Position numbers and translations under genes: made by a program
The notes under the pieces: model-generated
What the model saw: the letters and a program-made list of their open reading frames with translations, nothing else
Databases searched by the model: none
What the model was told of the DNA's origin: nothing
Source of the DNA: Octopus sinensis
Taxonomy: Eukaryota
Assembly: GCF_006345805.1 (NCBI RefSeq)
Contig: NW_021835051.1
Span: forward strand, 1 to 42,773
Direction: 5' to 3'
DNA: 42,773 nt
In this document: positions 5,700 through 38,309 of the stretch, piece by piece
Layout: each line of letters starts with the position of its first letter
Position numbering within the stretch: position 1 is the first letter of the stretch

Positions 5700-5935
5700 T
5701 CACTTTGATGGCATGCACTGCTCTCTCACTCAATAGTAATAATGATGATGATAATTCTTTCTGACTTCAATATGCTTAACTGGAATACCAGTGAAATAAT
5801 GAAACTTGGTAGAAAATTCCGCAAGCTACTGACTTGTAATAAGATGCACCATCCAAAGGCAGTAGTGGATCGACTTTACCTTCCCAGAGCTCAGGGAGGA
5901 CGAGGTTTGATCCAGATAAGACAATAATCAGATAA
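5700..5935 (+). mobile_element. R4/Dong-like non-LTR fragment
   Basis: MHHPKAVVDRLYLPRAQGGRGLIQI; follows an (AAT)n array. Confidence 0.7.
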
Positions 5936-6810
5936 GACAATGTCCGGCAAATATGGTGTGTGGGGCATTCGTTTCCCATTCAAATGACTTCGGCCTTTGG
6001 ATTGTCACCCTTGCTGTATGTGAGCGAGCATTATCTTCATGGAAGAACACCTTTCGACTTGAAAGCAAAGATAATCATTTTTCTTCTAGCGCTGATTTAA
6101 GCCGCTCAAGCTGCTCGCAGTAGATCTGTTTTGTTATAATTTGGTTTGGATTTAAAAGTTCAAAGTTTACTAAACCTTTCATATCCCACCAAACTGACGA
6201 CAACTGATTACGTGTTTAGCTTGAGGTGCCGGAGTTTCTCCTTCCTCTACCCACTCTTTTCGGCGCTTGAAATTTTTATATAGAAACCATTTCTCCTCAT
6301 CAGTAACTATTCTCTCCAAAAAAAGGTTCATTCGTGAAACGTGACAGCAAAGAAGAGGAAACATTCGCGCTCTGTGCGCGATTAGATTCGGAAAGTTTGT
6401 GAGGAAGCCGCTGCCCCAATTCACTGACTTTCCCGATGGCACGCAGGTGTCGATAAATGGTTGACTGACCAGATCCAAGTTACAATGGGATTTTCTTCCA
6501 CCAGGGTTTGCAGGACGTCCTCATCGAGCTCTACAGATCTTCCAAGATGAGGTTTGTCTTCTAGGCTTCAGTTTCCGGCTCGGAGTTTCTGGAACCACTG
6601 TTGACACTGGCTTACGCTTATTGTCCGATCCTCATACACTGCATTAATATCCCTTGCCTTTTCCGTTGCCTTCTTGCCTTTACTGAACTCATAAAGCAAA
6701 ATATGCCAAATATGTCCCTTTGTCACTTCCGTTATAGATACGAAAAAGTAACGGTTAAAATCGAACTGCATTCTTTAAAACTTGCATTAAGAATAAAAAT
6801 AATGTAAAAT
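5935..6810 (-). mobile_element. Mariner transposase remnant
   Basis: HILLYEFSKGKKATEKARDINAVY...QCQQWFQKLRAGN (HTH); RIVTDEEKWFLYKNFKRRKEW (first catalytic D region). Confidence 0.88.
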
Positions 6811-7280
6811 TGCCATCTGCTTTTACAGGTAAAATTACAACCTGCTTTTACAGGTAAGATTACTACCTGCTTTTATAGCAAGTTGATGCAGGCAGTTTAT
6901 CCCTTTCGGCTTTGACATTTAGATTATGCAACTGAAAAATCTGCATTATTTATGGGGTTTTTTTCAATATGTAGACCAATTATAAAAATCTGAAAGACTC
7001 TCTCTCTCTCTCCTCTTCCCACAGCCTAATGAGAGGCGTTTTCAAAATAGTAGGGGTAAAGTCACTTTCCCTACTTAACAGTAATATAGATTTGAACGTA
7101 GTATATCCGCTTTCTGCGTTCAAGAGATGAAATAATTTAACACAAAATTCCGGCATATTTTTTATCAAGCAATTATCTTCAGAATATTCTGGAAACCTGG
7201 ATTTTAATTTTTTTTTAATATACCCTGGATTGTAAAGTTGATTTAATATTCGTATTTTGATGTGAAGTTTTTATACTTAC

Positions 7281-7407
7281 GGAAGAATTCCACCGAAAAA
7301 ATCTGATGAATGGAAAGAAATTTTCTGGTACAAATACACCAATATATTTGAACACATCTTGAAAATGTTGAACGATCTCCTGAAACTCAGAATCACTGTA
7401 TTTGATC
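7281..7407 (-). CDS. CYP gene A exon 3
   Basis: ttgaag|G ATC; IKYSDSEFQEIVQHFQDVFKYIGVFVPENFFPFIRFFRWNSS|gtaagt (phase 0); 127 nt. Confidence 0.92.
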
Positions 7408-7489
7408 CTTCAAAAAGAAAACAGCAAAACATCATACATTCATAGCATGGCCGCAGTCAAATGACTAAAACATGTAAAAGAATAAAAGA

Positions 7490-7527
<38 letters not shown>

Positions 7528-7849
7528 ATATACTTTCAATAATAATAACGAGTAAAATTAATTAATTAATAATTCGGTATGTTAAAATAACTTTTATCGG
7601 TAAACTTATACAAAAATTCTATAATTATAAGCATAATTATAATTAAAGAGATGTAAAATTCCTATTTACTCACTTATTTCCAACTTCAGTGTAGTATTTC
7701 ACGTATAAGTTTGAAAGTACTTAATAATTAAATACGCATTCGACCAAGCGATATCGAATAACTAATATCCAACAAACAGCACTTCCAAATTTATACGGAC
7801 GAATAACGAATTCACACGTCTTAATTATAGAATTTATATATATATTTAA

Positions 7850-9185
7850 GATTGATGCCTGTTCACGTTGAAGGCGGGAGACTTGGTGACACCTGTGCTG
7901 ACACAGTCAGAACATGGACAGATGTAGCGAATGACTGGTAGAGCGGAAGTGGCGCGAGACCGGGCTGTCATTGCCAAATCTGATGTCTCGGAGGTGCTCC
8001 GCGAACCACTCGGTCAAGCGGTGTCCCTTTTGACCAATGTACAGAGAAGGACAGAGGGAGCAAGTGATGCTGTAAATAACATTACTAGAGGTGCAGGTAA
8101 AGGAATCGGTGACGAATGGGCGGGCCATGAGTTGAGATTGAGTCACAAAGTCATGGCCGTCACTGCATAACCTGCGTAGACACAGGAATTGGGATTAGGG
8201 AATGGAGAGCTTGGTGTGGGTTGAGTGGGAGGAGGAGAAGTTAATGTAGGAGTGTGAGTCAGTATGCTTAGATAGAGGTTGCTGACAGAAATGTCGAGAA
8301 ATTCGATGGAAGAGTTAGAGATAGTAGAGGAGAATTCGAGGTTAGGCTGAAAGGATTGGACAGAAAAAAGGAAGGAGTCCAGTTGTTCGCGGGAGAGTGA
8401 GGTCACGCCGATACAGTCGTCTATATAACGACCGTATAGCTCGAGAGTGAGACCAGTGAATTGTGAGAATATTTGGGCCTCATCGTAGCCAATGGACAGG
8501 TTCGCACAGTTGAGGCTCATTCTCGTTCCCATGGCCACTCCCGAAACTTTTGGTAAAACTCCACCGCGAACAAGAAGTAGCTGAGGGAGTGGAGAAGTTC
8601 AACCAGACGTGTGGAAATGTCAGGTTGAGGGTTAAGCCGATGGTCAAGGAAGGGTTTAAGCGCAAGAATTCCTTCGTTTTATGGGATCACCGTATACCGA
8701 GTCCTAATGTCAAAAGTGAACAGAATTTGAGAGGGTTGAGAAGGGAAGCTGAAAGAGTTAAACAGACGGAGAGCATGATTGGTATCGTGAATGTGTAAGG
8801 AAAGGGAAGCTATTAGGGGGCAAGGACACGGTCGAAGTATTTGGAGAACATTTCTGTGGGGCTGTTACTGGTGGAGACGATAGAGCGGCCAGAATTGTTA
8901 GGCTTGTGAATTTTGGAAATGAAGTAAATAGTGGGTGTGCGTGGGGTACGGACAATGAAGTTGGAGGCGGTGGGAGGAAGACAGGAGGAGGAAATGAGGT
9001 CATGAATAGTGGAAGACACAGTCTGTTGGTAGTTAGGTGTGGGGTTGGAGGGGAGTGGGCAAGAATATGAGAGGTTTAGTTCACTGATGATCTAAACAAA
9101 CGGTACGGTGCGTATGTGCTATAACCGGTCATCCGTGAGGTTCGGTGTTCACAGCTAAGGCTGGATTTAGTGATCCGTAGTAGGC
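7850..9185 (-). mobile_element. Decayed Penelope-like retroelement (RT + GIY-YIG)
   Basis: SKIHKPNNSGRSIVS, AMGTRM, YGRYIDDCIG (RT); NVIYSITCSLCPSLYIGQ...FAEHLRDI (GIY-YIG); frameshifted. Confidence 0.9.
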
Positions 9186-9386
9186 TTTCAAGCCTGCAGG
9201 TATATATTAAAGAAAAATGGAAAAGAAAACCAAGGCAGGACGAGTATCTCAGGTCATTAGAATATTTGATTGAAGTGAATCAAAAATGGAGAAATAGAAG
9301 TTGTTACTCCGACTCCATTTCTTATTCATCTTACTCTAACTAAATATTCTACATGAGATACTCATTCCGCCTTGGTTTTATTTTTC

Positions 9387-9492
<106 letters not shown>

Positions 9493-9839
9493 CATACATA
9501 GATACATACATACATAGACAAATACGGAAGGAATCAAGAATATTTGCATAATCTAAACAAAATTGAACTAAGATAGATAACTCAGAGTGACCAATAGCAT
9601 GTATTTGAAGAACATAGACAGAAAACAGGTATATTAAATATGATACAATATAAATTCATGCTTTCCTAGAATGATACAAGCTTCTAGAAAATGTGTTGGC
9701 ATTACCAAAGAATAGAGAACAACATCTTAATAGAAAGGGAGATAAGCTCAAAGAACAAGAATTCTCCATGTATACACACAAACATACACGTTCACACACC
9801 CACGTATATACACACACACACACTTACATACACACATTC

Positions 9840-10240
9840 TTTTATTCTCACATTCTTTTACTTGTCTGAGACAGTTGATTGCGGCCATGCAAGAGCACCA
9901 CTTTGAAGGGTGCTTTAGTCAAATAAATCAAACACAGGACTTATTTCTTAAGCCTAGTACTTATTCTTTTGAAGTCTTTTGCCGAACCGCTAAGTGACGC
10001 GGACGTAAACACACCAGCATCGGTTGTCGAGTTATGATGGATACACAAACACACACACAGACATACGCACTCAAACATATACATACACACGACGGGCTTC
10101 TTTCAGTTTCCGTCTACCAAATCCACTCACAACGCTTTGGTTGGCCCGAGGTTATAGCAGAAGACTCTAATCCAAGTGCTACGCAGTGGGACTGAACCTG
10201 GAACAATGTGGTTGGGAAGCAAACTTCTTACCACACAACT
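9840..10240 (-). mobile_element. tRNA-derived SINE
   Basis: Minus-strand head tgtgtggtaagaag...ttgttccaggttcagtccc with A/B-box-like motifs; internal (CA)n. Confidence 0.75.
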
Positions 10241-10295
10241 AACGCAAACACAAACATACACACCCATATATTTCTGGATCTGTACTGCTACTCAC

Positions 10296-10521
10296 CTTTT
10301 ACCAAATATGATATTGTATATGACACTCGAAGTGAAGAGTGGCAACTGTTTATTCAAGGAGAACGGTTTACCATTTTGAGATTGAAAAGCTTCGCCTAAT
10401 CTCTGGGTTTCTAAAGATATCTTTTCTTCCAGAACTTTTTTGCCTACTCCTAGTTCCCGAAGTGCTGACATGGTAAACTTTCTCTGGTCTTTCCATTGTT
10501 TTCCAGAACTAAAAACGATAC
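10296..10521 (-). CDS. CYP gene A exon 2
   Basis: tttcag|GT ATC...; (G)IVFSSGKQWKDQRKFTMSALRELGVGKKVLEEKI...IIFGK(R), C-helix WxxxR; ends AG|gtgagt (phase 2); 226 nt. Confidence 0.95.
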
Positions 10522-20016: not shown

Positions 20017-20383
20017 CTTTGTTTCGGAATACTTTATCTAAAGCATAGAGTGAACTCCTTCCATTCAGATGTTGTCCTTTTTTTACTAGTCCTTCCAAAA
20101 TCGTTTCAGTTTTACATACAAACACGTAGTTATATGGACCAATTTTGAGTTTAAAAATATCGCCATATTGTTTTTTTAGCTCTTTCAACATTGAATAAAA
20201 ATCGGTAATGGAAAGAACCTGAAGTAGATTTCCAATTATTGGAAGAGCTCTAGGACCCGGTGGTAAATTGTAGTTAGATTTTGGTGGTGTCATAAACCAT
20301 CGTATAATCAGTAAAATGACTAATCCAAATAACAAACTTTGGACACTAACATTCTCTGTAAAAAGTAATGCTGAAAAATCCAT
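20017..20383 (-). CDS. CYP2-like cytochrome P450 gene A, coding exon 1
   Basis: ATG at 20383; MDFSALLF... hydrophobic anchor, PPGPRALPIIGNL, KQYGDIFKLKIG; ends AAG|gtaagt (phase 1); 367 nt. Confidence 0.95.
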
Positions 20384-23411: not shown

Positions 23412-25451
23412 ACATTTTGCTTTGACGGTTAATGGCGGCCAAACCGAGGCAAGGATCGAGCTGAAAATTGGCAGGGATACTAAATGAGGATGAGACCTGG
23501 GATGGTTAAAATTCGCAAGCTATAAATATGTGGTTGCTATAGCAAAAAGATTGATTTTTTTATCGATTCAAGGGGGCCCAGAGCCCCTCTAGGTTTGTGC
23601 GATTGGCTTTTAATGCCCAATGGCATGCACTGCAGGCTGTTGTCCTCAATAAACATACATCTTGTCGCGAAATTCCGGCAACTAGGAAACGATTTTTCAT
23701 TGTGAATAAACGAGTGCTTTTTACCCTCATTTTCTTTTTAATCTTTTTATAAAAGTGAAAAGATTTCGTCTAATTATTTCTGCAGTCCACTTACGATGGT
23801 GATTCAGTTGACTAGGAAAACTATAAGTGAAGAATATCCAATACCAAACTATCTTAATCTACATATTGAAACTGCATTAAACTTTAGCAAGCTTACCTTT
23901 ACCTATTCTGAGTTACTTGAACGGCGATGTTCCCTTCCCTCTCTTCTGATTATGGATACCTTTTTTTTTTACCTTTGATACCGTTGTTTCACTTTAAGGA
24001 TGCTTCTTTACCCAGCCATTATGATATTTCGACTGCTGTCCACTGTTTCAAATAGGCTTTAGCATTGTCATTATAGCCTTTTTTAAACACTCACATATGA
24101 TTCGTCCCAAAGAATCAACCTTTAAATAAGAGTTTTGCTTCCACTAGCGAAAGCTATACATGTCTTTCAGGAAGCCCCTTACCAATTTAACTTTATGCAG
24201 CATTCGCTGTTAGTTTATGTGCACGATATGTGGGAAGATAGAATAAAGGGGTTTTTTATTAGCTTATCTCTCCGAAAAAATAGCTCCCTTTGCTGTTGAA
24301 AAAAATAAACTCGCAGAGGGAAAGTTTCAACATCTTCAATTTCCTTACATCATTTATGTGGATGTTTCTGACAAGAAATTTCGCTTTCATGTAAAATATT
24401 TTGTAGTCATTATCCGTAATCTACTCCCAAAACACTTCAGTAGCTCTACTTTACATCGCTTGCAAACTTATATGTTCTAGGATAATCGAAGTGCAACGAC
24501 CTCCACAATAACCAGCCTTCAATTTGATTTTCCATTCCTAGGTTAATCGGAAGCAATTTGCCATGCTACACATAAACCTTCCCGGTAGTTCAATTATTTG
24601 GTGAAAAAATACCACGAAAGCATCTTAAACCGTTTAAAGGACAGGTGCGTTTGCTAGTTTACTATAAATTATAAATGTTTTATTGGGAATTACGAGACGG
24701 ATGTTCCATTATGGTATTATGGTGTTGTAAATAAATGTGGTTGGTGTATTTGGAAAATCAATAGACTAGGGCATAGCTAGTCAACAAAGGAACTTCTGTG
24801 TGGTTGGTCGACCTTCAAGAAATGACAGCTACAACTTCTGCAAGTCACTCAGATACTTCTTTTTCAGAAGAGGAAAGGCACTTTGGATAATGTCCTCCGA
24901 ATCACTCTGTCCAAAAAGCAAAGCAAAAGAAAACAATATCCAAAGCAGATGGGATAATTAAGACTTAAAAAGCTTTTAACCATAGGTCTGCTCGAACAGG
25001 CACAACCTTGAAGCAAACCAGAAACAAATCATATACTACCAGTTTAATGTAAGAAAGACGCGGGGGGAATGTAACCCCTGTGGCTTCCTGCTTCTTCGAT
25101 TAAATTGAAAGAAAAGGAGACAAACAATGGGCGCAGTGGGAAGAACTTGTATGATATGTTTGTTGTATCACAACTGATCTAAACATTGAATATTATCATC
25201 GTAATAATTTCATAATAGTTATTCATAGCTTATTTTCGTTGAATTGTACAAAGGAGTATACCGCAATTAGCAAAATAGAGAAAGCTCTACATCGAGGAAA
25301 TTACAATATCAAAGTTTTAAAGGAAAAGGTAAACATGACCACCACCATATTGCTCGAAGTTTTGTCTATTTCTAATCTCTATATATCACGATGCATACCT
25401 ACAGATAGTGCTCATGATATATCAGTCTAGGTATATAACCATGTGTGTCAA

Positions 25452-25457
25452 TTTAAT
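25452..25457 (-). promoter_or_regulatory. Candidate poly(A) signal for exon 8b
   Basis: ATTAAA on minus strand about 180 nt after the 8b stop. Confidence 0.25.
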
Positions 25458-25636
25458 AAACTCTATGGAGGAATACTAAAGAAAGGAAACATAGACAAAT
25501 ACAATAATTCACGATCGTTGAACTGTCAGTATTCTGCGAAGAAATAGGACCTCTGCTTTCAAAGAGATGTATTTTCAGTTATATCTAGTATACCTTAAAT
25601 AGGTACGCTAAAACACATATATATGACTGATGTATA

Positions 25637-25815
25637 TCACAATCCTGTTACACGGATATTATCATTCACTGGAACATAAGTGATGCCTGGTTGCTTGCCT
25701 TCTAATTTCATTGGTGCTTTTATAGGTTTTTCCAACTGAAATATCTGTAAGATTTTTGTAAAAGTGATGAAAGCTTCCGTATTAACCAGTGTCACTCCTG
25801 CACACATTCTTGGAC
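25637..25815 (-). CDS. CYP gene B terminal exon 8b (distal duplicate)
   Basis: Same acceptor ctgctttatttgtag; (G)PRMCAGVTLVNTEAFITFTKILQIFQLEKPIKAPMKLEGKQPGITYVPVNDNIRVTGL*; 179 nt, in frame with exon 7; use in mRNA not shown. Confidence 0.8.
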
Positions 25816-26259
25816 CTACAAATAAAGCAGATGTTACAAATAAAACGATATACATACACATGTGCTAACATGTGATAAAATTTGAATATATTTACCCGCA
25901 CACACAAACACACACACACATACATTCACACACATACGTACGCACACACTCACACAATACATTTATAATTAAAATGTAAACATAGGTTCATTGAACAAAT
26001 TTAAATATCACAGCCTTTACATTTCACTATTAATATTTATTCATCGTACATAAGGACTATGAGCCTGAAAATGTTTTCGAGCAGTAGTCAATGCTGTATC
26101 AAAGCTGATAAGCCGTCATTGACTTTAGTTTAGGTGTAAATATCTTTCCTTTGTGAAGTCGAACAAACTTCTCTTCATAGACACACACGTCCTGATCAAC
26201 GTCAGACGTCAGAAATCGATTTTCATGAAATAACAACCAAGGTTATTGAAATACGCGTG

Positions 26260-26695
26260 GCGCCTTCTGAAAAAATTTTGACCACAAATTTTGAAAACAT
26301 TTTTGAAAAAATTTTAACGAAAATTTTCTAGAAGAATTTTCAAAAAAAATTTAAGAAAAATTAAAACCCAAATTTAGAAATATTCTTGAAAAAATTTTGA
26401 CCAAAACTATCAAAAAAAAATTTTCAAAAAATTAAAAAATATTTTGACCAAAATTTTCGAAACAATTTTTGAAAAGATTTTGACGAAAGATTTCAAAAAA
26501 TTTTTTTTTAAATTCGAAAATTTTCGTCAAAATTTTTTCATAAATATTTTGAAAATTTCTGGTCAAAATTTTGACGAAAATTTTTTATAAAATTTTTGAA
26601 AAAATATTGACGAAAATTTTTGAAAAATTTTCAAAACATTTTGACGAAACATTTTTGTTAAAATTTTGACGAAAATTTTCGAAAAATCTTTGTAA
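26260..26695. repeat. Degenerate AT-rich minisatellite
   Basis: Repeated aaaattttgacg/aaaatttt motifs, roughly 10-22 bp periodicity. Confidence 0.8.
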
Positions 26696-26712
26696 AAAGT
26701 ATGTGTTTGTAT

Positions 26713-26923
26713 GCACGCCGGGCGAAATGCGTAACCGTATTTCGTCTGCCGTTACGTTCTGAGTTCAAATTCCGACGAGGTCGACTTTGCCTTTCATCCT
26801 TTCGGGGTCGATTAAATAAGTACCAGTTATGCACTGGTGTCGATGTAATCGACTTAATCCGTTTGTGATTCCTTGTTTGTCCCATCTGTGTTTAGTCCCT
26901 TGTGGGTAGTAAAGACATAGGTA
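26713..26923 (+). mobile_element. SINE between exons 8a and 8b
   Basis: High similarity to 20997-21217 over its length. Confidence 0.85.
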
Positions 26924-27087
26924 TATGTATGTGTGTGTATACATACATACATACATACATACATACATACAAACAAAAGTACCCTGTTGTTGATGTTGAA
27001 ATTCCAATGAAGGAACTTTGGATGTGGGTTAGAAGCCGGCTCTTTCTCTATTGGTAAAAAAATCTTGAAATAAAACTGATAATTGGT

Positions 27088-27355
27088 ATACATACATACA
27101 TACGTGCATGCATTCATGCACACATACATACATATATACAAACGTATATCGTACATGCATGCATCCATCCATACATACATACATGCATAAATACGTACAT
27201 ACATACATACATACATATATGCATGCATGCATACATACATACATACATACTTACATACATACATATATACGTACATACATACATACATACATGCATGCAT
27301 ACATATATACATACATATATACGTATATACATACATACGTACTTACATGCATACA
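27088..27355. repeat. (TACA)n microsatellite
   Basis: Direct inspection; similar arrays at 29905-30028, 31080-31160 and 32545-32705. Confidence 0.95.
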
Positions 27356-27859
27356 CAAGCACTCAAGCTCACGCGCACATTGGCGCGCAACAATGTCTCA
27401 GACAAACGCAGCTTCCATAAAAGACTAAAAATATTCATCGAACATTTTGCAAATAGCAACGAAAGATCTTTGACAAAAAAACAAACAAACAAACAAACAA
27501 AAGCAAAACAGACGATTGACTGTTTAACCAAGTTAAACAAACAATCTATTAGTTAGTTGGATTTCTAACCAATTGACTAATAAAAAAGGACTGGAATCGA
27601 GCCAGTATGTGTGTTATTACTCCTTGCATAATGTCTCTCCCTGGACACAACAAAATTTCTATCAACACACGAATTCACACAAAGAATCTTGCAAAGCCAA
27701 TGCAAAAACGAAATGATAATTTATCTTATAGTTTTATTTGCGTAAATTATACGAAGGAGTGTACACGAATTAGCAACATAAAGAAAACTGTAACTCAAGG
27801 AAATTGCGAAGGGAAAGGAAGACATTTTGTCCACCATATTGCTCGAAATTTTGTCTATT

Positions 27860-27865
27860 TTTATT
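27860..27865 (-). promoter_or_regulatory. Candidate poly(A) signal for exon 8a
   Basis: AATAAA on minus strand about 230 nt after the 8a stop; the hexamer is common in AT-rich DNA. Confidence 0.35.
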
Positions 27866-28090
27866 CTCTATATGTCATGGTACATATCCGCATATATTCC
27901 TATTGATATACCAGCATACATATATTACCATGTGTGTCTATCGAATAATATTGTTGGAGAACTACCAAGAGTGAAAGCATAGAGAAATACTATAATTTAC
28001 TATCGCGGATCTGCCAGTATTCTACAAAGAAAATGTTTCTCTACTTTCCAAAAGATATCTTCTCGCTGTCCAAATTCTGACCAAATTACA

Positions 28091-28269
28091 TCACAATGAT
28101 ATTGCACGGATATCATCATTCGTTGGGGCATAACTGAGGCCAGACATGTTGCCCTCTAGCGTCATTGGTGTTTCGTCAGGTCTTTCCAACTGAAATTTCT
28201 GTAAGATGTTTGTAAAAGCCAGGAAAGCTTCCATATTGGCTAATGACATTCCTGAACACATTCTTGGAC
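28091..28269 (-). CDS. CYP gene B terminal exon 8a (proximal)
   Basis: ctgctttatttgtag|GT CCA AGA ATG TGT; (G)PRMCSGMSLANMEAFLAFTNILQKFQLERPDETPMTLEGNMSGLSYAPTNDDIRAISL*; completes FGSGPRMCSG; 179 nt; absent from the ORF track. Confidence 0.93.
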
Positions 28270-29041
28270 CTACAAATAAAGCAGTAGTTATAAATTAAAC
28301 AACACACACTATGTATGCTAAATATGTATCATATACAAGTGATAAAAATTAGATAAGTCGTCATTGATTTTAGTTAGGTGTGAATATGTTCTGGCTGTTA
28401 TCTCCTACACCCTTTATATAGTCGAACAGACTTCCAGTCATAGACACACACGCCCTGACAATAGTCAGATGTTATAAATGGATTTCCAGAAACTACAACC
28501 ATCCTGAAATTACCCAGTGTATTCAAGCACACGGGATTGCCTTCAAGATGACTGTTAATATAAAGGGAGGTAAGTGTTTCCCATAGCGCGAAGTTATAAA
28601 TTTGAATTTGAAATCGAGGAATCAAGTAATTTTATTAAAAATATGTTATTAAATGAATAAGATAAACAAATCGAGGCTTGCTCACAGAAATAAGGATATA
28701 TCTCGGGAGAAAAAATGACAAAATATTTGTTTAGAGAATAAATATTCTATGTAGCGTATTTAGTGGAACATTGATGCATATTTTGTTGAAGCGATGAATA
28801 TCAATACGCACTTAAATAAGATTTGAAGTAGATTGCTGTTTTATAGTGTCTCATTTTTACTAATGTCAAACCAACTCTGGTGATTCTACAATTCAATAAT
28901 TAAATCTCCCCTTAACATACAGTTTTTAAACAATCATTAGATAGTCTAGCTGTAGATCGAGGCAAATGTTGTGTTGGTCACGACTGGGAACCGTTTGATT
29001 ATAGATATACTAAATCATTAGAATCTATTTACAATACTTAC

Positions 29042-29248
29042 CCGAACCGAAAGGTAAAAAAGCCTCATTTTTCTTTAACTCATTATTTTCATCAATCCAT
29101 CTTTCAGGACGGAATTCCTCTGGTTTATCCCAATAATTCGGATCAGAATGAGCTTCCAATAATAAGAATGAAACGAGAGTATCTTTTGGAATATCATAAC
29201 CTTGAAGAGTTGTTTGAACTTCAGCGGTGTGTGGAGCAGTTACAGAAG
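29042..29248 (-). CDS. CYP gene B exon 7 (meander)
   Basis: ttctag|CT; (A)SVTAPHTAEVQTTLQGYDIPKDTLV...DPNYWDKPEEFRPERWIDENNELKKNEAFLPFGS G|gtaagt; PERF-type motif and FxxG; 207 nt; absent from the ORF track. Confidence 0.95.
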
Positions 29249-29771: not shown

Positions 29772-29868
29772 CAATTGTCCCAATTCTGTGAACCTCAAAA
29801 AGAGTTGCTGCAACGTATGTCATATGTGGTTTGTCTTCCATTGTAACAGGTCTGGTCCCATTGGTGAT
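29772..29868 (-). CDS. CYP gene B exon 6 (J/K helix)
   Basis: tttcag|ATC; ITNGTRPVTMEDKPHMTYVAATLFEVHRIGTI, ExxR = EVHR; G|gtaaga (phase 1); 97 nt. Confidence 0.93.
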
Positions 29869-30029
29869 CTGAAATAGATAAGCATTCACAAAAGACTTAA
29901 TTCATAATACATGCATACAAACAAACATACATACATACATACATACATACATACATACATACATACATACATACATACATACATACATACATACATACAT
30001 ACATACATACGTACGTACGTGCGTACATA

Positions 30030-30260
30030 CTTATCTCTTTGAAAATCGAAGTAAAAGAGAATATCTATGGACAACTGCTTCGAAATCTCCAGCTTCTATA
30101 TCCAGGCTCTGAATTCATATTCATACTAATAATACTTGGAGCACTAAGTTTTGTTAAAGGAGAATGTGGATAAACTGGGATTTTCAGAGAGAGAAATCGG
30201 CCAGCTAATTCGTACATTACAAGTGCAATCTGTGAGTGGAACTGTAAAAATATGCAACAC
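30030..30260 (+). mobile_element. R4/NeSL-like C-terminal fragment
   Basis: YGQLLRNLQLLYP...ILGAL...LIRTLQVQSVSGTVKICNTFLKF. Confidence 0.65.
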
Positions 30261-30419
30261 TTTTCTCAAGTTCAAATGTGAATTTGTCTATGTTAACTAC
30301 ATCTCAAAGATGGAACCTTGTCTCTTTATTGACATCACCTCCCTACAACCGTTAACAAAGTTACCATTATTGTATTATCTGATATACTAAAACTCTATAC
30401 CACGATCTCGCACCAATAT

Positions 30420-30920
30420 GGACTGGAGGGAATAAGTTTCTGGCTGGAAAAATTCTTTTATGAAATCCCAGACAGAAGTAAAAATGTTTAATTACCAAAG
30501 GATTAAAATTCATCCTTAAAAACAATGTTTTCGAGTTTAATGACAATATTTATGAACAAATATCTGGGACAGCTATGGGGGAAAAAGTCGCCCCAATGCA
30601 AATCTAGTCATGGTATACATGGAGTTCCAGATATATGAACAATGTAACTTAAAATATGGCTTGGATTTCCATAAATATTTACTAGAAAATTAGAAACGCT
30701 ACTTATATGACTTCCTTAAAAGCTCATCGATTCTGTACCAACACGCCGAACAGGAACACGAGGGATCAATCAACAACATAGAAATTAAAATATTGTCCAC
30801 ACATAGAACAGATGCAACAATTAGACAAATTACAGAAGCTACACACATAATAGAAGATAAACCTAGCCTGAATAGGAAACTGGAATGGAACACTAGCACA
30901 CACTACAACATATGACGTAG
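30420..30920 (+). mobile_element. Penelope-like fragment, internally deleted
   Basis: NNVFEFNDNIYEQISGTAMGEKVAP (RT) followed within about 150 nt by a C-terminal-like IRQITEATHIIEDKPSLNRKLEWN. Confidence 0.7.
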
Positions 30921-31687
30921 AGGATCCCCATAAACTGGTTACAATATAAACAAAACCGAAAACATAATAAATAAGATACACAGATAAATAAACAAATAGA
31001 AATAAATAACTACATAAGATTTTTTGTTTAATTTAAAATATTGTTTTTGATTTATTATTATTATTACTAGTATTGTTGTTATACATACATACATACATAC
31101 ATACATACATACATACATACATACGTACATACATACGTACATACATACATACAAGCATACGTAATGATAATAATAAGTGGATGTAAACACATGAACAAAT
31201 AAGAATAAACAAAAACAACAACAACAAAATCAAATTACACGAACGTATATAAACAGAAGATACAAATATTACAGGCCCCTCCCCACACACTAAATAAACA
31301 TAGACGCACATAAAGATATAAGCATGCGCAAATGAAGACATACAATAGAAATACAAAATGGCTGACGGTTAGTAAGGAGAGACACAAATAAGAAAGAAGA
31401 AAACAAAGGACCACTGTTGCGGTCACAGGAGTGTGACGAAAGAACTCTGGCCGAAATAAGATTAAGATTAATGTAAAAAATAAATAACACTGAAGCAATA
31501 TAACACCAAATATATAGTGCGCCTGTTTTTTTTTGGCTAAACTGGCAAAATGACCATTCCGAAATATAACAATATCTGTTTCAACACACAACTTCACATA
31601 AAATATCTTGCACAACAAATATATAAATATACAAACACACACACACACAAACACATATATATATATATCTATCTAAATATATATATG

Positions 31688-31743
<56 letters not shown>

Positions 31744-32302
31744 ATATATATATATTTGTATGTTTGTATGTGTGTGCGTGTGTGTATATGTGTGTGTGTG
31801 TGTGTGTACAAGCATTCATGAAACCATAACTTTTGAATTATTATCGGACACGCTCAATGAAAAAGTGCATGGTATAAACGAAGACGTGTTTTGTGAGGTT
31901 CATACCTGTCAATTTACCCCACCCGCACACATTCACACGCACAGCCGCGTACACACGCACACAAAGAGAATGTACTGTTCGCTTTTTTGTAGCATCAGTA
32001 AATAGTTTTCAGTCCAACTATCGTAAGATATCATTTAATGACGGCAGGAGTTGTACGTGAACTACTTGAAATTTCATACCCGATTAGTGCAATCATCGGA
32101 CAGGCTTGTTTCGCGTATTATACATGATTCAGCGATCTGGCAAGCTCAAACGATATGGCTACTCTGTGAGTAAACGCGAGAAAAATAGCAGAGGGCATTA
32201 AGAAATATTTGAAAGGAAAAGAAAGTATAAAAATTACACAATTAATCTATCTTCTTAAACTCTATTAACTATTAAAACAGGACAAATATATAAATAATTT
32301 AC

Positions 32303-32439
32303 CTGTACAATTTCTTTTCGACACTTCTTCTGTACATCCGTGTATTTGGCCATACAGAGAAAAGCCCAGGTAAGATGGTTAGCAGTCGTGTCGGTTCCAG
32401 CCAGAAATAAGTCGCAAATTGTGTGGAACATATTCTCAT
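32303..32439 (-). CDS. CYP gene B exon 5 (I helix)
   Basis: (D)ENMFHTICDLFLAGTDTTANHLTWAFLCMAKYTDVQKKCRKEIVQ|gtaaat; 137 nt. Confidence 0.95.
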
Positions 32440-32590
32440 CTTCGATGTAGAAATGATAATTAGATTTAAAAGCTTAATAATTTTCTCATAAATTTCCCAA
32501 CTTAATTAAATATATATATATATATATCTATATATATGTATATACGTATTTATGTATGTATGTATGTATGTATGTATGTATGTATGTATG

Positions 32591-32621
<31 letters not shown>

Positions 32622-32946
32622 GTAAGTATGCATGCATGTATGTATGTATGTATGTATGTATGTATGTATGTATGTATGTATGTATGTATGTATGTATGTA
32701 TGTATGTGTGTGTCTGTGTCTGTGCGTGTCTGTGTGTGTGCATATAAAGAAAGCATGTTTGGGAAAGAGAAAATTATATGGATTATTTATTATAGAATGT
32801 TGTTTCTTCAAAATAATTTATAATATACCCTTTATATCTTTTATATTTTATTTCATGATTAAAATAATTCTTTTTGTTGTTAATTTCTGTTATTGACATC
32901 ATTGAAGAATTATAAGAATACAATTAACAGCTCATACAAAACTCAC

Positions 32947-33103
32947 CAGTTAACGTTTCACTGTTTGGTTCCTTCTGAAGCGTCAGCAAATACATATCAA
33001 TGAAATCTCTTATGTTTTCAGCATTAAACGTTTCTTTATGTTCTATGATTTTATCTTTTATGTAACTTTTCACCTTCTCCTGCTTCCTTATAACCTTTTC
33101 TAT
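32947..33103 (-). CDS. CYP gene B exon 4
   Basis: IEKVIRKQEKVKSYIKDKIIEHKETFNAENIRDFIDMYLLTLQKEPNSETLT G|gtgagt; 157 nt. Confidence 0.93.
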
Positions 33104-33581
33104 CTATAACAAGACAGTCAACAACAACAGTAACGTATTTGCCGAATTAAATGTTTTACAATATAACATTTTTTATCAAATCACACTTAATTCTATGTTT
33201 ATATCTAGTTGGAGCTGACTTTCTTATTGAGTCAATAAAAATAAACACAATTATTCACCAATCTAACCACTATAAACCAGTTGGTAATAAAATTCTTTAT
33301 TTCCAAACTACCAACGCCATATAAATTGCACACGGAATTACATTTAATTGTAAGATAAATTATTTATCTTGCATGGAATTGTTTTGAAGTAGCGAGTTAT
33401 ATATTCATATGTACACACACGTACACACATTAGACATTCAGTAGTACAACACAAAAAAACCCAAATATATGGCACACTAGGCATAACAACAACGTGAAGT
33501 TCCAAAATTGTCTCTTGAGGTTTCTGGGTGAGACTTGGAGCCAACTTGTACAGACATAAAGCAAAAGTCAATCATAGAACG

Positions 33582-33644
<63 letters not shown>

Positions 33645-33654
33645 TAATAATAAT

Positions 33655-34090
33655 GTGCGCGTTTAAATTCGGAAAGTTTGTGAGGAAGCCGTTGCCCCAA
33701 TTCACTGACTTTCCCGATGGCACGCAGGTGTCGGTGAATGGTTGATTGACCAGATCCAAGTTACAATGGGATTTTCTTCCACCAGGGTTTGCAGGACGTC
33801 CTCATCGAGCTCTACAGATCTTCCAAGATGAGGCTTGTCTTCTAGGCTTCAGTTTCCGGCTCGGAGTTTCTGGAACCACTGTTGACACTGGCTTACGCTT
33901 ATTTACCGATCCTCATACACTGCATTAATATCCCTTGCCTTTTCCGTTGCCTTCTTGCCTTTACTGAACTCATAAAGCAAAATATGCCAAATATGTCCCT
34001 TTGTCACTTCCGTTATAGATTCGAAAAAGTAACGGTTAAAATCGAACTGCATTCTTTAAAACTTGCATTAAGAATAAAAATATGGTAAAA
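33655..34090 (-). mobile_element. Mariner remnant, truncated duplicate copy
   Basis: Matches 6370-6810; catalytic-domain half missing. Confidence 0.85.
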
Positions 34091-34557
34091 TTGCCATCTG
34101 CTTTTACAGGTAAAATTACAACCTGCTTTTACAGGTAAAATTACTACCTGCTTTTATAGCAAGTTGATGCAGGCAGTTTATCCCTTTCGGCTCTGACATT
34201 TAGTTTATGCAACTGAAAAATCTGCATTATTTATGTTTTTTTTTTTCAATATGTAGACCAATTATAAAAATCTGAAAGACTCTCTCTCTCCTCTTCCCAC
34301 AGCCTAATGAGAGGCGTTTTCAAAACCGTAGGGGTAAAGTCACTTTCCCTACTTAACAGTAATATAGATTTGAACGTAGTATATCCGCTTTCTGCGTTCA
34401 AGGGATGAAATAAGTTAACACGAAATTTCGGCATATTTTTTATCAAGCAATTATCTTCAGAATATTCTTGAAACCTGGATTTGAATTTTTTTTAATATAC
34501 CCTGGATTGTAAAGTTGATTTAATATTCGTAATCTGATGTGAAGTTTTTATACTTAC

Positions 34558-34684
34558 GGGAGAATTCCACCGAAAAAATCTGAGAAGTGGTAAGAAATTT
34601 TCTGGTACAAATATACTAATATATTTGAACACATCTTGAAAATGTTGAACGATCTCCTGAAACTCAGAATCACTGTATTTGATC
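34558..34684 (-). CDS. CYP gene B exon 3
   Basis: IKYSDSEFQEIVQHFQDVFKYISIFVPENFLPLLRFFRWNSP|gtaagt; 127 nt. Confidence 0.92.
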
Positions 34685-35282
34685 CTTCAAAAAGAAATCA
34701 GCAAAACATCATACATTCATAGCATGGCCGCAGTCAAATGACTGAAACAAGTAAAAGAATAAAGAATACACACACACACACATACACACACACACACAAA
34801 CACACACACATATACTTTCAATAATAATAATGAGTAAAATTAATTAATTAATAATTCGGTATGTTGAAATAACCTTTATCGGTAACCTTATACAAAAATT
34901 CTATAATTATAAGCATAATTATAATTAGTATTCAGCAAAATGCTTCACCACATACCGAATAAGAAATAGGAGTTAAATACTATTCTTCTATAATAAGATA
35001 TCTTATTTTTCATAGGTAAAGAGAAAAAATAACGAATCCACACGACTTTGATTAATTACATACGCGTTTCGGGATTAAAGAGATGTAAAATTCATATTTA
35101 CTCACTTATTACCCACTTCAGTGTAGTATTTCACGTATAAGTTTGAAAGTACTTAATAATTAAATACGCATTCGACCAAGCGATATCGAATAACTAATAT
35201 CCAACAAACAGCATTTCCAAATTTATACGGACGAATAACGAATTCACACGTCTTAATTATAGAATTTATATATATATTTAAG

Positions 35283-36612
35283 ATTGATGCCTGTTCACGT
35301 TGAAAGTGGGAGACTTGGTGCACCTGTGCTGACACAGTCAGAACATGGACAGATGTAGCGAATGACCGGTAGAGCGGAAGTGGCGCGAGAGCGGGGTATC
35401 ATTGCCAAATATGATGTCTCGGAGGTGCTCCGCGAACCACTCGGTGAAGCGGTGTCCCTTTTGACCAATGTACAGAGAAGGACAGAGGAAGCAAGTGATG
35501 CTGTAAATAACATTACTAGAGGTGCAGGTAAAGGAATCGGTGACGAATGGGCGAGCCATGAGTTGAGACTGAGTCTCAAAGTCATGGCCGTCACTGCATA
35601 ACCTGCGAAGACAGAGGAATTGGGATTAGGGAATGGAGAGCTTGGTGTGGGTTGGGTGGGAAGTGGAGAAGTTAAGGTAGGAGTGTGAGTCAGTATCCTT
35701 AGATGGAGGTTGCTGACAGAAATGTCGAGAAATTCGAGGGAAGAGTTAGAGATAGTAGAGGAGAATTCGAGGTTAGGCTGGAAGGATTGGACAGAAAAAA
35801 GGAAGGAGTCCAGTTGTTCGCGGGAGAGTGAGGTCACGCCGATACAGTCGTCTATATAATGACCGTATAGCTCGAGAGTGAGACCAGTGAATTGTGAGAA
35901 TATTTGGGCCTCATCGTAGCCAATGGACAGGTTCGCACAGTTGAGGTTCATTCTCGTTCCCATGGCCACTCCGAAACTTTTGGTAAAACTCCACCGCGAA
36001 CAAGAAGTAGCTGAGGGAGTGGAGAAGTTCAACCAGACGTGTGGAAATGTCAGGTTGGGGGTTAAGCCGATGGTCAAGGAAGGGTTTAAGCGCAAGAATT
36101 CCTTCGTTTTATGGGATCACCGTATACCGAGTCCTAATGTCAAAAGTGAACAGAAATTTGAGTGGGTTGAGAAGGGAAGCTGAAAGAGTTAAACAGACGG
36201 AGAGCATGATTGGTATCGTGAATGTGTAAGGAAAGGGACGCTATTAGGGGGGCATGGACACGGTCGAAGTATTTGGAGAACATTTCCGTGGGGCTGTTAC
36301 TGGTGGAGACAATAGAGCGGCCAGAATTGTTAGGCTTGTGAATTTTGGAAATGAAGTAAATAGTGGGTGTGCGTGGGGTACGGACAATGAAGTTGGAGGC
36401 GGTGGGAGGAAGACAGGAGGAGGAAATGAGGTCATGAATAGTGGAAGACACAGTCTGTTGGTAGTTAGGTGTGGGGTTGGAGGGGAGTGGGCAAAAATAT
36501 GAGAGGTTTAGTTCACTGATGATCTAAACCAACGGTACGGTGCGTATGTGCTATAACCGGTCATCCGTGAGGTTCGGTGTTCACAGCTAAGGCTGGAGTT
36601 AGTGATCCGTAG
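35283..36612 (-). mobile_element. Decayed Penelope-like retroelement, duplicate copy
   Basis: Same motifs (GVAMGTRM, YIDD, YIGQ); paralogue of 7850-9185. Confidence 0.9.
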
Positions 36613-36820
36613 TAGGCTTTCAAGCCTGCAGGTATATATTAAAGAAAAATGGAAAAGTAAACCAAGGCAGGACGAGTATCTCAGGTCATTTAGAATATTT
36701 GATTAAAGTGAATCAAAAATGGAGAAATAGAAGTTGTTACTCCGACTCCATTTCTGATTCATCTTACTCTAACTAAATATTCTACATGAGATACTCATTC
36801 CGCCTTGGTTTTATTTTTCC

Positions 36821-36872
<52 letters not shown>

Positions 36873-36960
36873 CAACAATTGAGGGTAAAATTAATTAATT
36901 AATCAATTTCACCAAGTATTCAGTATGCAAAGGGACCATTTAAGGCGAATTCAAATTATT

Positions 36961-37222
36961 ACATTATATAAAAGGGCTTAGTATAATAAATTACTTTGCC
37001 GCATACTGAACTCATTAGAAATAGCAGCTAAAAAAAACTTTTTCAAAACTATTTCCAATACTTAAAGAAAACCTCTCTCATATAGTGTTTGCTCAATTCA
37101 AACACTATATAGTGTTTTCTTTAAGTATTGGAAATAGTTTTAAAAAAGTTTTTTAGCTGCTATTTCTAATGAGTTCAGTATGCGGCAAAGTAATTTATTT
37201 TACTAAGCCCTTTTATATAATG

Positions 37223-37223
<1 letters not shown>
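36961..37223. repeat. Near-perfect hairpin (about 110-bp arms) unique to copy 2
   Basis: acattatataaaagggcttagta...gaaaac / gttttc...tactaagcccttttatataatgt, with a nested small stem in the loop. Confidence 0.9.
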
Positions 37224-37289
<66 letters not shown>

Positions 37290-37612
37290 CATACATACAT
37301 AGACAAATACGGAAGGAATCAAGAATATTTGCATAGATAACTCAGATAGATAACTCAGAGTGACCAATAGCATGTATTTGAATAACATAGACAGAAAACA
37401 GGTATATTAAATATGATACAATATAAATTCATGTTTTGCTAGAATGATACAAGCTTCTAGAAAATGTGTTGGCATTACCAAATGATAATTGAGAACAACA
37501 TCTTAAAAGAAAGGGAGATAAGCTCAAAGAACAAGAATTCTCCATGTATACACCCAAACATACGCATTCACACACCCACGTATATATACACACACACACT
37601 CACATACACACA

Positions 37613-38030
37613 TTCTTTTATTCTCACATTCTTTTACTTGTCTCAGACAGTTGATTGCGGCCATGCAGGAGCACCACTTTGAAGGGTGCTTTAGTCAAAT
37701 AAATCAAACACAGGACTTATTTCTTAAGCCTAGTACTTATTCTATTGAAGTCTTTTGCTGAACCGCTAAGTGACGCGGACGTAAACACACCAGCATTGGT
37801 TGTCGAGTTATGATGGACACACAAACACACACACAGACGCACGCACAAACATACGCACTCAAACACATACATACACACGACGGGCTTCTTTCAGTTTCCG
37901 TCTACCAAATCCACTCACAATGCTTTGGTTGGCCCGAGGTTATAGCAGAAGACTCTAATCCAAGTGCTACGCAGTGGGACTGAACCTGGAACAATGTGGT
38001 TGGGAAGCAAACTTCTTACCACACAACTAA
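37613..38030 (-). mobile_element. tRNA-derived SINE, duplicate copy
   Basis: Paralogue of 9840-10240. Confidence 0.75.
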
Positions 38031-38083
38031 CGCAAACACAAACATACACACCCATATATTTCTGGATCTGTACTGCTACTCAC

Positions 38084-38309
38084 CTTTTACCAAATATGAT
38101 ATTGTATATGACACTCGAAGTGAAGAGTGACAACTGTTTATTTAAGGAGAACGGTTTACCATTTTGAGATTGAAAAGTTTCGCCTAATCTCTGGGTTTCT
38201 AAAGACATCTTTTCTTCCAGAACTTTTTTGCCTACTCCTAGTTCCCGAAGTGCTGACATGGTAAACTTTCTCTGGTCTTTCCATTGTTTTCCAGAACTAA
38301 AAACGATAC
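38084..38309 (-). CDS. CYP2-like gene B exon 2
   Basis: Same length and splice sites as gene A exon 2; (G)IVFSSGKQWKDQRKF...KMSLETQRLGETF...QLSLF...FGK(R). Confidence 0.95.

What the first reader, a model, noticed from the sequence alone, without database searches (positions are those of the whole stretch)
25637..28269. Two intact alternative terminal exons, each with the P450 heme-ligand cysteine
Seen: exon 7 ends in phase 1 (FGS G|gt). Downstream lie two 179-nt exons with the identical acceptor ctgctttatttgtag|GT CCA AGA ATG TGT, each open to a stop at the same position. By hand count they are 34/59 aa identical, without indels or premature stops. The co-duplicated flanks (about 25240-25430 vs 27740-27900, and 26110-26200 vs 28355-28470) do show indels. 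No second exon 7 is visible between them, so only the last exon and its flanks were duplicated, and much earlier than the whole-gene duplication. Established: this exon supplies the RxCxG Cys, the L helix and the beta-4 region containing substrate recognition site 6. Inference: one locus may make two catalytically complete P450s with different C-termini by alternative last-exon choice, or by poly(A)-site competition. This is an unusual way to diversify a P450.
Basis: partly seen in the sequence, partly recalled or inferred. Interest (0 to 1): 0.8.

Follow-up and report, generated by a model that had tools for sequence, protein, structure and literature searches.

The report
Orphan duplicate last exon, octopus P450
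An octopus detoxification-type P450 gene carries a second, still readable copy of its last exon 2.3 kb downstream, but that copy has evolved without the constraint seen on working last exons, so it is more likely a leftover of a partial duplication than a second enzyme form.

Summary
On the minus strand, exon 7 (29248-29042) ends in phase 1. Two 179-nt exons follow, 8a (28269-28091) and 8b (25815-25637). They have the same 15-nt acceptor and the same stop position, are 34/59 aa identical, and have no indels.

The window is an Octopus (vulgaris/sinensis group) tandem array of CYP2-like genes. 8b lies in the spacer between gene B's exon 8a and exon 1 of the next gene (20383-20017). No other exon relic lies nearby. 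The 8a+8b pair is present in all four array copies I could read from O. vulgaris and O. sinensis. Three more distant paralogues have a single last exon.

The functional reading is not supported by the sequence:
- The 8b stem branch has omega about 3.6, against 0.31 for paralogue last exons (p=0.004), and is not distinguishable from 1.
- Its intactness is unremarkable under neutrality (roughly 0.1-0.2).
- One O. vulgaris copy has lost the acceptor AG.
- The conserved AATAAA site behind 8a has decayed behind 8b.
- The three gene models whose 3' ends I could check end in 8a.

The most likely reading is an unconstrained solo ("detritus") exon. Alternative last-exon use remains possible, at about 0.2. 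RNA junction data are needed to settle it.

The parts
29042..29248 (-). Gene B exon 7 (207 nt). It ends in phase 1 with ...PFGS+G and has a GTAAGT donor.
28270..29041 (-). Intron 7 (772 nt) between exon 7 and exon 8a.
28091..28269 (-). Exon 8a, the last coding exon used by the three public gene models checked. It carries the heme Cys (GPRMCSG), the L helix and the SRS6 stretch EGNMSGLSYAP.
27733..27738 (-). AATAAA 352 nt after the 8a stop, followed by a GU-rich stretch. It is conserved in 4 of 4 copies and is the likely poly(A) signal of 8a.
26251..27700 (.). Spacer between the two duplicated units, made almost entirely of later repeats: (ATAC)n at 27088-27355 and 26939-26975, a SINE-like element at 26713-26924, and an AT-rich 12/83-nt satellite at 26268-26698.
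25816..26250 (-). Remnant of intron 7 upstream of 8b. It is homologous to 28270-28501 and to the last intron of paralogue P0007, and is interrupted by a (CA)n at 25899-25956. It includes the intact acceptor ctgctttatttgtag.
25637..25815 (-). Exon 8b, the orphan duplicate of the last exon. It is an intact 179-nt ORF in phase 1 (GPRMCAGVTL...RVTGL*).
25212..25636 (-). 3' flank of 8b, homologous to the 3' flank of 8a (72% identity with 3 indel events). The site homologous to the 8a AATAAA reads AATAAG here.
25452..25457 (-). ATTAAA 179 nt after the 8b stop. A second ATTAAA at 25048-25043 has a GU-rich downstream stretch. These are the only candidate poly(A) signals for 8b.
20017..20383 (-). Exon 1 of the next tandem gene (gene A), starting at ATG 20383. 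It matches Pfam p450 positions 1-86. 8b ends 5.25 kb upstream of it.
29772..38309 (-). Gene B exons 2-6: 38309-38084, 34684-34558, 33103-32947, 32439-32303 and 29868-29772. All frames and splice sites are intact. Exon 1 lies beyond the right end of the window.
2597..10521 (-). Gene A exons 2-5: 10521-10296, 7407-7281, 5279-5123 and 2733-2597. Its exons 6-8 lie beyond the left end of the window.

Best explanation
Exon 8b is a solo copy of the last exon of a CYP2-like P450 gene. It arose either by a small tandem duplication of [end of intron 7 + last exon + 3' UTR] or by decapitation of a neighbouring paralogue; the data do not separate the two. This happened long before the roughly 28-kb gene unit itself was duplicated, so every tandem unit now reads exon 1...7, 8a, 8b, spacer. 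Exon 7 is spliced to the first identical acceptor (8a), and the transcript ends at the conserved AATAAA/GU-rich site 350 nt further on, so 8b is normally left outside the mRNA. Freed from selection, 8b has drifted. It is still open only because few substitutions have hit it. Shown: the anatomy, the age, the presence in all copies read, the relaxed constraint, and the splice-site loss in one copy. Inferred: that 8a is the exon used and that 8b is not maintained as a second isoform.
For: (1) A branch codon model on 11 last exons gives omega 0.31 for paralogue branches, 0.47 for the 8a stem (not different from background, p=0.52) and 3.6 for the 8b stem. The 8b stem differs from background at p=0.004 and does not differ from 1 (p=0.16). 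The result is the same under all three 8a/8b/P0007 topologies. Pairwise omega for 8a-8b is 0.88, against 0.24-0.38 between working paralogues. (2) Intactness is not evidence of selection. P(no stop) is 0.38-0.55 for 12-20 neutral substitutions. Flank indel density predicts 2.1 events per 179 nt over both lineages, P(0)=0.12, or about 0.35 for one lineage. Exon identity of 77.7% is not significantly above 3' flank identity of 71.9% (p=0.18). (3) Among the four recent copies, 8b changes as fast as its flanks (0.034 per site against 0.034 and 0.020), with 5 nonsynonymous to 1 synonymous change. (4) In O. vulgaris copy 2 the 8b acceptor AG is AT. (5) The AATAAA behind 8a is conserved in 4 of 4 copies. 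The homologous site behind 8b reads AATAAG, AATATA, AATATA and AATAAA in the four copies. (6) The three gene models whose 3' ends I could check all end in 8a: O. vulgaris CAI9729728.1, the 375-aa O. sinensis model in L002, and P0001's gene range. No gene call covers 8b in L001 or L002. (7) 8b is an isolated exon in an intergenic spacer.
Against: 8b is open, in phase and full length in all four copies read, with an acceptor identical to that of 8a in three of them. It keeps the family-consensus SRS6 motif GITYVPVNDNIR, which 8a has lost. Amino-acid polarisation against seven paralogues gives similar numbers of derived changes in 8a (13) and 8b (11). Exons 2-7 of these young copies also show a high omega (0.67), so recent comparisons have little power. 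Omega above 1 on the 8b stem could equally reflect adaptive change. The ATTAAA at 25048-25043 with a GU-rich downstream stretch could serve as a poly(A) site. Annotation in this array is poor (chimeric and truncated models), so the absence of an 8b model is weak evidence. The codon test rests on 59 codons and my own implementation.
Confidence: 0.6

Rival explanations
1. 8b is a genuine alternative last exon. Exon 7 is spliced either to 8a or, when 8a and its poly(A) site are skipped, to 8b. This would give two complete 498-aa P450s that differ in the L helix and SRS6, with 8b keeping the ancestral SRS6 and 8a carrying a fast-changing one.
For: Both exons are open and in phase, with identical acceptors. 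Either one completes a 498-aa ORF that includes the heme cysteine. The pair has been kept through the gene duplication and in two species, in 4 of 4 copies read. There are no indels in either exon, against 5 events in 428 flank nt. 8b keeps the consensus ITYVPV motif. A stem omega above 1 is compatible with neofunctionalisation. A precedent exists for exon-swap P450 isoforms in CYP4F3A/B (PMC12784423).
Against: There is no purifying selection on 8b on the stem or in the recent copies. The acceptor AG is lost in O. vulgaris copy 2. The canonical poly(A) signal has decayed. No gene call covers 8b in L001 or L002, and the three models whose 3' ends I checked end in 8a. The proximal exon has an identical acceptor plus a strong poly(A) site and should win by default. 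The no-indel and no-stop pattern has a chance probability of about 0.1-0.2.
Confidence: 0.22
2. 8b is occasionally captured by read-through transcripts, giving a minor, non-adaptive mRNA form. This would resemble the CYP3A7-3AP1 transcripts that capture downstream pseudogene exons, or the intergenic splicing reported in P450 clusters.
For: The acceptor is intact and identical to that of 8a. Public models in this array already join exons of different tandem copies: P0001 joins exon 5 of copy 1 to exons 6-8a of copy 2, and one O. sinensis model spans 118 kb across five other P450 genes. This hints at, or at least is modelled as, long-range splicing. The precedent is Finta & Zaphiropoulos 2000, Gene 260:13, seen only as a title in a reference list.
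Against: There is no transcript evidence either way. The chimeric models may be mapping or lift-over artefacts among 95-99% identical copies.
Confidence: 0.13
3. 8b is the principal, ancestral last exon, and 8a is the newer, degenerating insert that annotators picked only because it comes first.
For: 8b is closer than 8a to the O. bimaculoides protein A0A0L8HJA8 (78% against 68%) and keeps the consensus SRS6 motif. The recent 8a copies show 12 nonsynonymous to 1 synonymous change, and 8a with its flank diverges 2-3 times faster than the 8b region.
Against: The 8a stem omega (0.47) resembles that of working paralogues, while the 8b stem does not. 8a has the conserved AATAAA/GU-rich site. 8a is proximal with an identical acceptor. 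8b has lost its AG in one copy.
Confidence: 0.05

Closest known systems
[quoted passage not shown]
   Same: A single P450 exon with no other exons of its own gene, lying between tandem family members and produced by partial duplication or deletion. It evolves without the constraint of its working counterparts.
   Different: In the window, and in 3 of 4 copies read, it has no disabling lesion, keeps a perfect acceptor, and lies directly downstream of an exon 7 with which it is in phase. It could therefore still be used. It has also been co-amplified with the whole gene unit.
CYP4F3A/CYP4F3B, two enzymes from one gene by mutually exclusive exons 4 and 3 (PMC12784423)
   Same: A duplicated exon within one P450 gene. 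In CYP4F3 the choice of copy changes a substrate-contact region and hence specificity.
   Different: The CYP4F3 exons are internal (residues 67-114), the choice is tissue-regulated and shown experimentally, and both forms are active enzymes. Here the exon is terminal and carries the heme cysteine, use would require skipping a poly(A) site, and no expression or constraint has been shown.
[quoted passage not shown]
   Same: A P450 transcript can read through and splice to exons of a downstream pseudogene remnant in the same cluster, which changes the C-terminus.
   Different: As I recall it, that case appends exons after an almost complete coding sequence. Here the captured exon would replace the whole heme-binding last exon.
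Vertebrate CYP2 family (best solved relatives are CYP2B enzymes, E about 4e-95)
   Same: The fold-defining motifs are present. To my knowledge, the position and phase of the last intron just before G-x-R-x-C-x-G, and a last coding exon of about 180 nt, are as in vertebrate CYP2 genes. Both occur as tandem arrays with fast-evolving substrate-recognition sites.
   Different: This is an octopus lineage-specific expansion with 8 coding exons rather than 9, and it is not an orthologue of any vertebrate CYP2 subfamily. The '2B-like' names are automatic.

Membership tests
Cytochrome P450, CYP2-like (Pfam PF00067) | Significant match to the P450 profile or to solved P450s over the full length | tested here: met
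   The exon 1 ORF matches PF00067 positions 1-86 (E=1.8e-12). The composite 498-aa product matches CYP2B structures over residues 16-495 at E about 1e-94. Database homologues carry PF00067.
Cytochrome P450, CYP2-like (Pfam PF00067) | Heme-ligand signature FxxGxRxCxG, completed across the exon 7 / exon 8 junction | tested here: met
   PFGSGPRMCSG with 8a and PFGSGPRMCAG with 8b.
Cytochrome P450, CYP2-like (Pfam PF00067) | I-helix AGxxT, K-helix ExxR and PERF-type motifs in the upstream exons | tested here: met
   AGTDTT (exon 5), EVHR (exon 6) and FRPERW (exon 7) are present in the translated exons. They were read by eye, not scored.
Gene with alternative last exons | Two terminal exons, each with a usable 3' splice site and its own stop codon, both in phase with the shared upstream exon | tested here: met
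   In O. vulgaris copy 2, however, the 8b AG is AT.
Gene with alternative last exons | Each terminal exon has its own polyadenylation signal | tested here: inconclusive
   8a has a conserved AATAAA with a GU-rich stretch. Behind 8b the homologous hexamer is degenerate and only ATTAAA variants remain, at 25457 and 25048.
Gene with alternative last exons | Transcripts that join the common exon to each terminal exon | not testable with these tools
   No RNA data were available. The three models whose 3' ends I checked end in 8a. The protein word-index searches aimed at 8b returned nothing and missed even a known 78% relative, so they are uninformative. The 74-aa ORF containing 8b is not on record.
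Gene with alternative last exons | Both exons maintained by purifying selection | tested here: not met
   The 8b stem omega is 3.6 against a background of 0.31 (p=0.004). The recent 8b copies show 5 nonsynonymous to 1 synonymous change and diverge as fast as their flanks. Power is low (59 codons).
Solo ('detritus') exon of a P450 cluster | An isolated exon without the other exons of its gene, inside a tandem P450 array | tested here: met
   No other P450 exon lies between 28090 and 20384 at E below 0.03. The flanking genes are mapped.
Solo ('detritus') exon of a P450 cluster | Disabling lesion or demonstrable non-use | tested here: inconclusive
   The window, O. vulgaris copy 1 and the O. sinensis contig are intact. 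The splice acceptor is lost in O. vulgaris copy 2.

The most novel reading that the evidence does not exclude
Every unit of this octopus CYP2-like array is a two-headed gene. By choosing between two heme-binding last exons it would make one enzyme with the ancestral SRS6/L-helix (8b) and one with a rapidly diversifying SRS6 (8a). This would be a P450 isoform switch at the terminal, cysteine-bearing exon, maintained through gene amplification and speciation.
Probability: 0.2. Interest if true: 0.65.

Novelty: new member of a known kind. Interest (0 to 1): 0.3.

Why it matters
If 8b were used, it would be to my knowledge a rare case of a P450 swapping its heme-binding, SRS6-bearing terminal exon, and a neat mechanism for widening substrate range in a lineage-specific detoxification array. 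On the present evidence it is instead an example of how partial duplicates persist intact in young tandem arrays. Such exons can mislead annotation and by-eye reading: an open, in-phase exon with a perfect acceptor is not sufficient evidence of an isoform. It also flags this octopus P450 array as poorly annotated, with chimeric and truncated models.

Tried and rejected
- **Protein word-index searches for an annotated product ending in 8b.** I tried an exon 1 + 8b chimera and 8b alone. They returned nothing, not even the known 78% relative P0002. I therefore treat them as uninformative rather than negative.
- **Exact look-up of the 74-aa ORF containing 8b.** I searched public assemblies, including run-level assemblies, hoping for transcript contigs. 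It is not on record.
- **Exhaustive representative search with exon 7 + 8b.** The best hit is a 67% paralogue. Clustering at 50% hides isoforms, so there is no information on 8b use.
- **O. bimaculoides locus.** Protein A0A0L8HJA8 is not on record with DNA, so the key outgroup genome could not be read.
- **Conservation test among the four close copies.** Divergence is only 1-3% and even exons 2-7 show omega 0.67, so there is too little power. I do not use it as strong evidence.
- **'Co-duplicated flanks prove a recent exon-only duplication': rejected.** The last intron and proximal 3' flank of paralogue P0007 align to 8b about as well (67% over 776 nt) as 8a does (70% over 645 nt). The 8a/8b/P0007 topology is unresolved. 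Only the longer shared 3' flank (about 370 nt against 110-140 nt) and the lowest dS favour 8a and 8b as sisters.
- **Pfam scans of long ORFs.** Scans elsewhere in introns and the spacer found nothing except P450 exon 1. ARAGORN found no tRNA in the SINE-like element.
Full report
**What the window is**

The finding lies in a tandem array of CYP2-like cytochrome P450 genes on the minus strand of an Octopus genome.
- Peptides from the region hit only Octopus proteins. The best is O. vulgaris CAI9729728.1 at 94%; O. sinensis and O. bimaculoides paralogues score 65-74%.
- The DNA aligns at 97.3% to O. sinensis contig VCDQ01002035 (L002). It aligns at about 92-95% in BLAST terms, or 1-3% substitutions locally, to O. 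vulgaris chromosome OX597824 (L001).
- A composite of exon 1 of the downstream gene with exons 2-8 of the upstream gene gives an open 498-aa protein. Its best solved relatives are CYP2B enzymes (E about 1e-94).

**Gene map**

- Gene B has its exon 1 beyond the right end of the window. Its other exons are exon 2 38309-38084, exon 3 34684-34558, exon 4 33103-32947, exon 5 32439-32303, exon 6 29868-29772, exon 7 29248-29042 and exon 8a 28269-28091. All frames and GT/AG sites are intact.
- Gene A has exon 1 at 20383-20017 (Pfam p450 positions 1-86), exon 2 10521-10296, exon 3 7407-7281, exon 4 5279-5123 and exon 5 2733-2597. Its exons 6-8 lie beyond the left end of the window.
- The two genes belong to a recent segmental duplication: 2277-14961 matches 31983-42773 at 93-98%.

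**Check of the observation**

- Exon 7 ends ...FGS+G|GTAAGT in phase 1.
- 8a (28269-28091) and 8b (25815-25637) are each 179 nt and are preceded by the same ctgctttatttgtag. They stop at the same codon, are 34/59 aa and 140/180 nt identical, and have no gap.
- The flanks are homologous with indels.
- No second exon 7 lies between them.

- 8b is not inside a gene body. It lies in the spacer between gene B's 8a and exon 1 of gene A, 5.25 kb upstream of that exon. No relic of any other P450 exon lies anywhere from 28090 to 20384.
- The 1.4 kb between the end of the 8a-unit homology (about 27700) and the start of the 8b-unit homology (about 26250) is made of microsatellites, an AT-rich satellite and a SINE-like element. 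The two units were therefore probably adjacent originally.
- The 8a+8b pair is a fixed part of the tandem unit. It is present in both O. vulgaris copies in L001 (8a at 14175 and 43224; 8b at 16659 and 45302) and in the O. sinensis contig (2161 and 4605).
- Three more distant paralogues in the same array have a single last exon, and no second copy in the downstream sequence I could read: 2.3 kb to the next gene for the 499-aa gene, and 10 kb for P0004 and P0007.

**Age and origin**

- dS between 8a and 8b is 0.30 and the JC distance of the 3' flanks is 0.35. Exons of the gene A and gene B copies differ by only 2-6%.
- It is nearly as old as the split from paralogue P0007. dS is 0.335 for 8b-P0007 and 0.41 for 8a-P0007.
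- The last intron and proximal 3' flank of P0007 align to the 8b region at 67% over 776 nt, about as well as 8a does.
- The three possible 8a/8b/P0007 topologies have nearly equal likelihood (-761.07, -761.49 and -762.03).
- 8a and 8b do share a longer 3' flank (about 370 nt, against 110-140 nt with other paralogues).
- I cannot separate a small tandem duplication of the gene's 3' end from decapitation of a once-complete neighbouring paralogue. Either way the result is an orphan last exon.

**Is 8b maintained?**

1. *Constraint.* Pairwise omega for 8a-8b is 0.88, against 0.24-0.38 between working paralogues. In a branch codon model (my own GY94/F3x4 script, 11 sequences, 59 codons), background omega is 0.31. 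The 8a stem is 0.47, not different from background. The 8b stem is 3.6, different from background at p=0.004 and not different from 1 at p=0.16. The result holds on all three topologies. Three-taxon Nei-Gojobori splits, done by hand from the distances, point the same way (8a 0.5-0.8, 8b 0.9-1.9).
2. *Intactness.* With 12-20 neutral substitutions, the chance of no premature stop and a retained stop codon is 0.38-0.55. Flank indel density (5 events in 428 nt) predicts 2.1 events in 179 nt over both lineages, P(0)=0.12, or about 0.35 for the 8b lineage alone. Exon identity (77.7%) is not significantly above 3' flank identity (71.9%, p=0.18). An open 8b is what neutrality gives roughly one time in five to ten.
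3. *Recent history.* Across the four copies, 8b has 6 changes (5 nonsynonymous, 1 synonymous) at 0.034 per site, the same as its flanks at 0.034 and 0.020. Power is low because exons 2-7 themselves show omega 0.67.
4. *A lesion.* In O. vulgaris copy 2 the acceptor reads ...tttgtaT|GTCC, so the AG is lost.
5. *3' end signals.* AATAAA at 27738-27733 with a GU-rich stretch behind it is conserved in all four copies. The homologous hexamer behind 8b reads AATAAG (window), AATATA (both O. vulgaris copies) and AATAAA (O. sinensis contig). Only ATTAAA at 25457 and 25048 remain.
6. *Annotation.* The O. vulgaris model, the 375-aa O. sinensis model and P0001's gene range all end at the 8a stop, and nothing is called on 8b in L001 or L002. 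This is weak evidence, because annotation here is poor.

**Points in favour of use**

- 8b is open and in phase in 4 of 4 copies, with a perfect acceptor in 3 of 4.
- 8b keeps the family-consensus GITYVPVNDNIR, whereas 8a has changed it to GLSYAPTNDDIR.
- Polarisation against seven paralogues gives 13 derived residues in 8a and 11 in 8b.

**Most likely mechanism**

Exon 7 is spliced to the first of two identical acceptors (8a), and the transcript is cleaved at the conserved site about 350 nt further on. 8b stays outside the mRNA and drifts. It is a solo ('detritus') exon that has been copied along with the gene unit. I put this at about 0.6. A maintained alternative last exon is about 0.2. Occasional non-adaptive capture by read-through is about 0.13. 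8b as the principal exon is about 0.05.

**Comparison with what is known**

- P450 clusters are described as genes, pseudogenes and detritus exons in tandem (PMC4964396). This is the kind I file 8b under, with the difference that 8b is still spliceable on paper.
It also resembles the capture of downstream pseudogene exons by CYP3A7 (Finta & Zaphiropoulos 2000; I saw the title only).
- Neither precedent involves swapping the heme-binding terminal exon, so the novel reading would be of real interest if RNA data supported it.

**What led nowhere**

- Protein-index searches for an 8b-ending product were uninformative.
- The exact-ORF look-up found nothing on record.
- The representative search gave no close hit.
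- The O. bimaculoides locus could not be fetched.

Noticed in passing
window 28125-28148 (codons 41-48 of exon 8a); L001 14175-14353 and 43224-43402; L002 2161-2339: The SRS6 stretch of 8a differs in each of the four recent copies: NMSGLSYA, NLSGLIYA, NLSAIVYA and NMSGLVYV. Across 8a as a whole there are 12 nonsynonymous changes to 1 synonymous, and crown omega is about 4 (p=0.095 against 1). This may be diversifying selection on substrate contacts among young tandem duplicates.
   Followed up: partly
window 27690-28269 compared with 24437-26200: Divergence among the four copies is uneven. 8a and its 3' flank run at 0.067-0.10 per site, while 8b, its flanks and the next 800 nt run at 0.02-0.034 (0 of 799 differences between the window and the O. 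sinensis contig). This suggests gene conversion or differing copy histories. It is unexplained.
   Followed up: no
L001 10001-43402 (O. vulgaris OX597824.1): The public model CAI9729728.1 (203 aa) is a chimera. It joins exon 5 of tandem copy 1 to exons 6-8a of copy 2, skipping a whole gene's worth of exons. An O. sinensis model (XP_029642749.2) has a 118-kb range that encloses five other P450 genes. Annotation of this array is unreliable.
   Followed up: partly
L002 23446-23668 (O. sinensis VCDQ01002035.1): Exon 2 of the downstream gene copy aligns with 7 gap columns. The public model (P0011, 145 aa) runs out of frame after exon 1. This is either a pseudogenised copy or an assembly error. The window's two copies of exon 2 are intact.
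   Followed up: partly
window 26713-26924 and 21011-21222: Two copies (93.9% identical) of a 212-nt SINE-like element lie in the region, one between 8a and 8b and one upstream of gene A exon 1. ARAGORN calls no tRNA in them.
   Followed up: no
window 10676-10959, 11650-11868, 13734-14320 and counterparts at about 38464-38747, 39440-39658, 41532-42100: Long (TA)n arrays of 110-295 units lie inside intron 1 of both gene copies. The long 'ORFs' listed there are artefacts of these repeats.
   Followed up: no
window 8001-9000 and 35001-37000: A G+C-rich segment (0.44-0.48, against about 0.31 around it) with strong positive GC skew (0.23-0.40) lies in intron 2 of both gene copies. A 266-aa ORF at 35295-36095 has no Pfam match. 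Its nature is not determined.
   Followed up: no
protein P0002 (O. bimaculoides A0A0L8HJA8), last 59 residues: The C-terminus of this protein is intermediate between 8a and 8b. It shares derived residues with 8b (K33 and T57, and a non-Asp residue at position 32, where the other six paralogues have Asp). This could mean that a complete gene with an 8b-type last exon exists in O. bimaculoides.
   Followed up: partly
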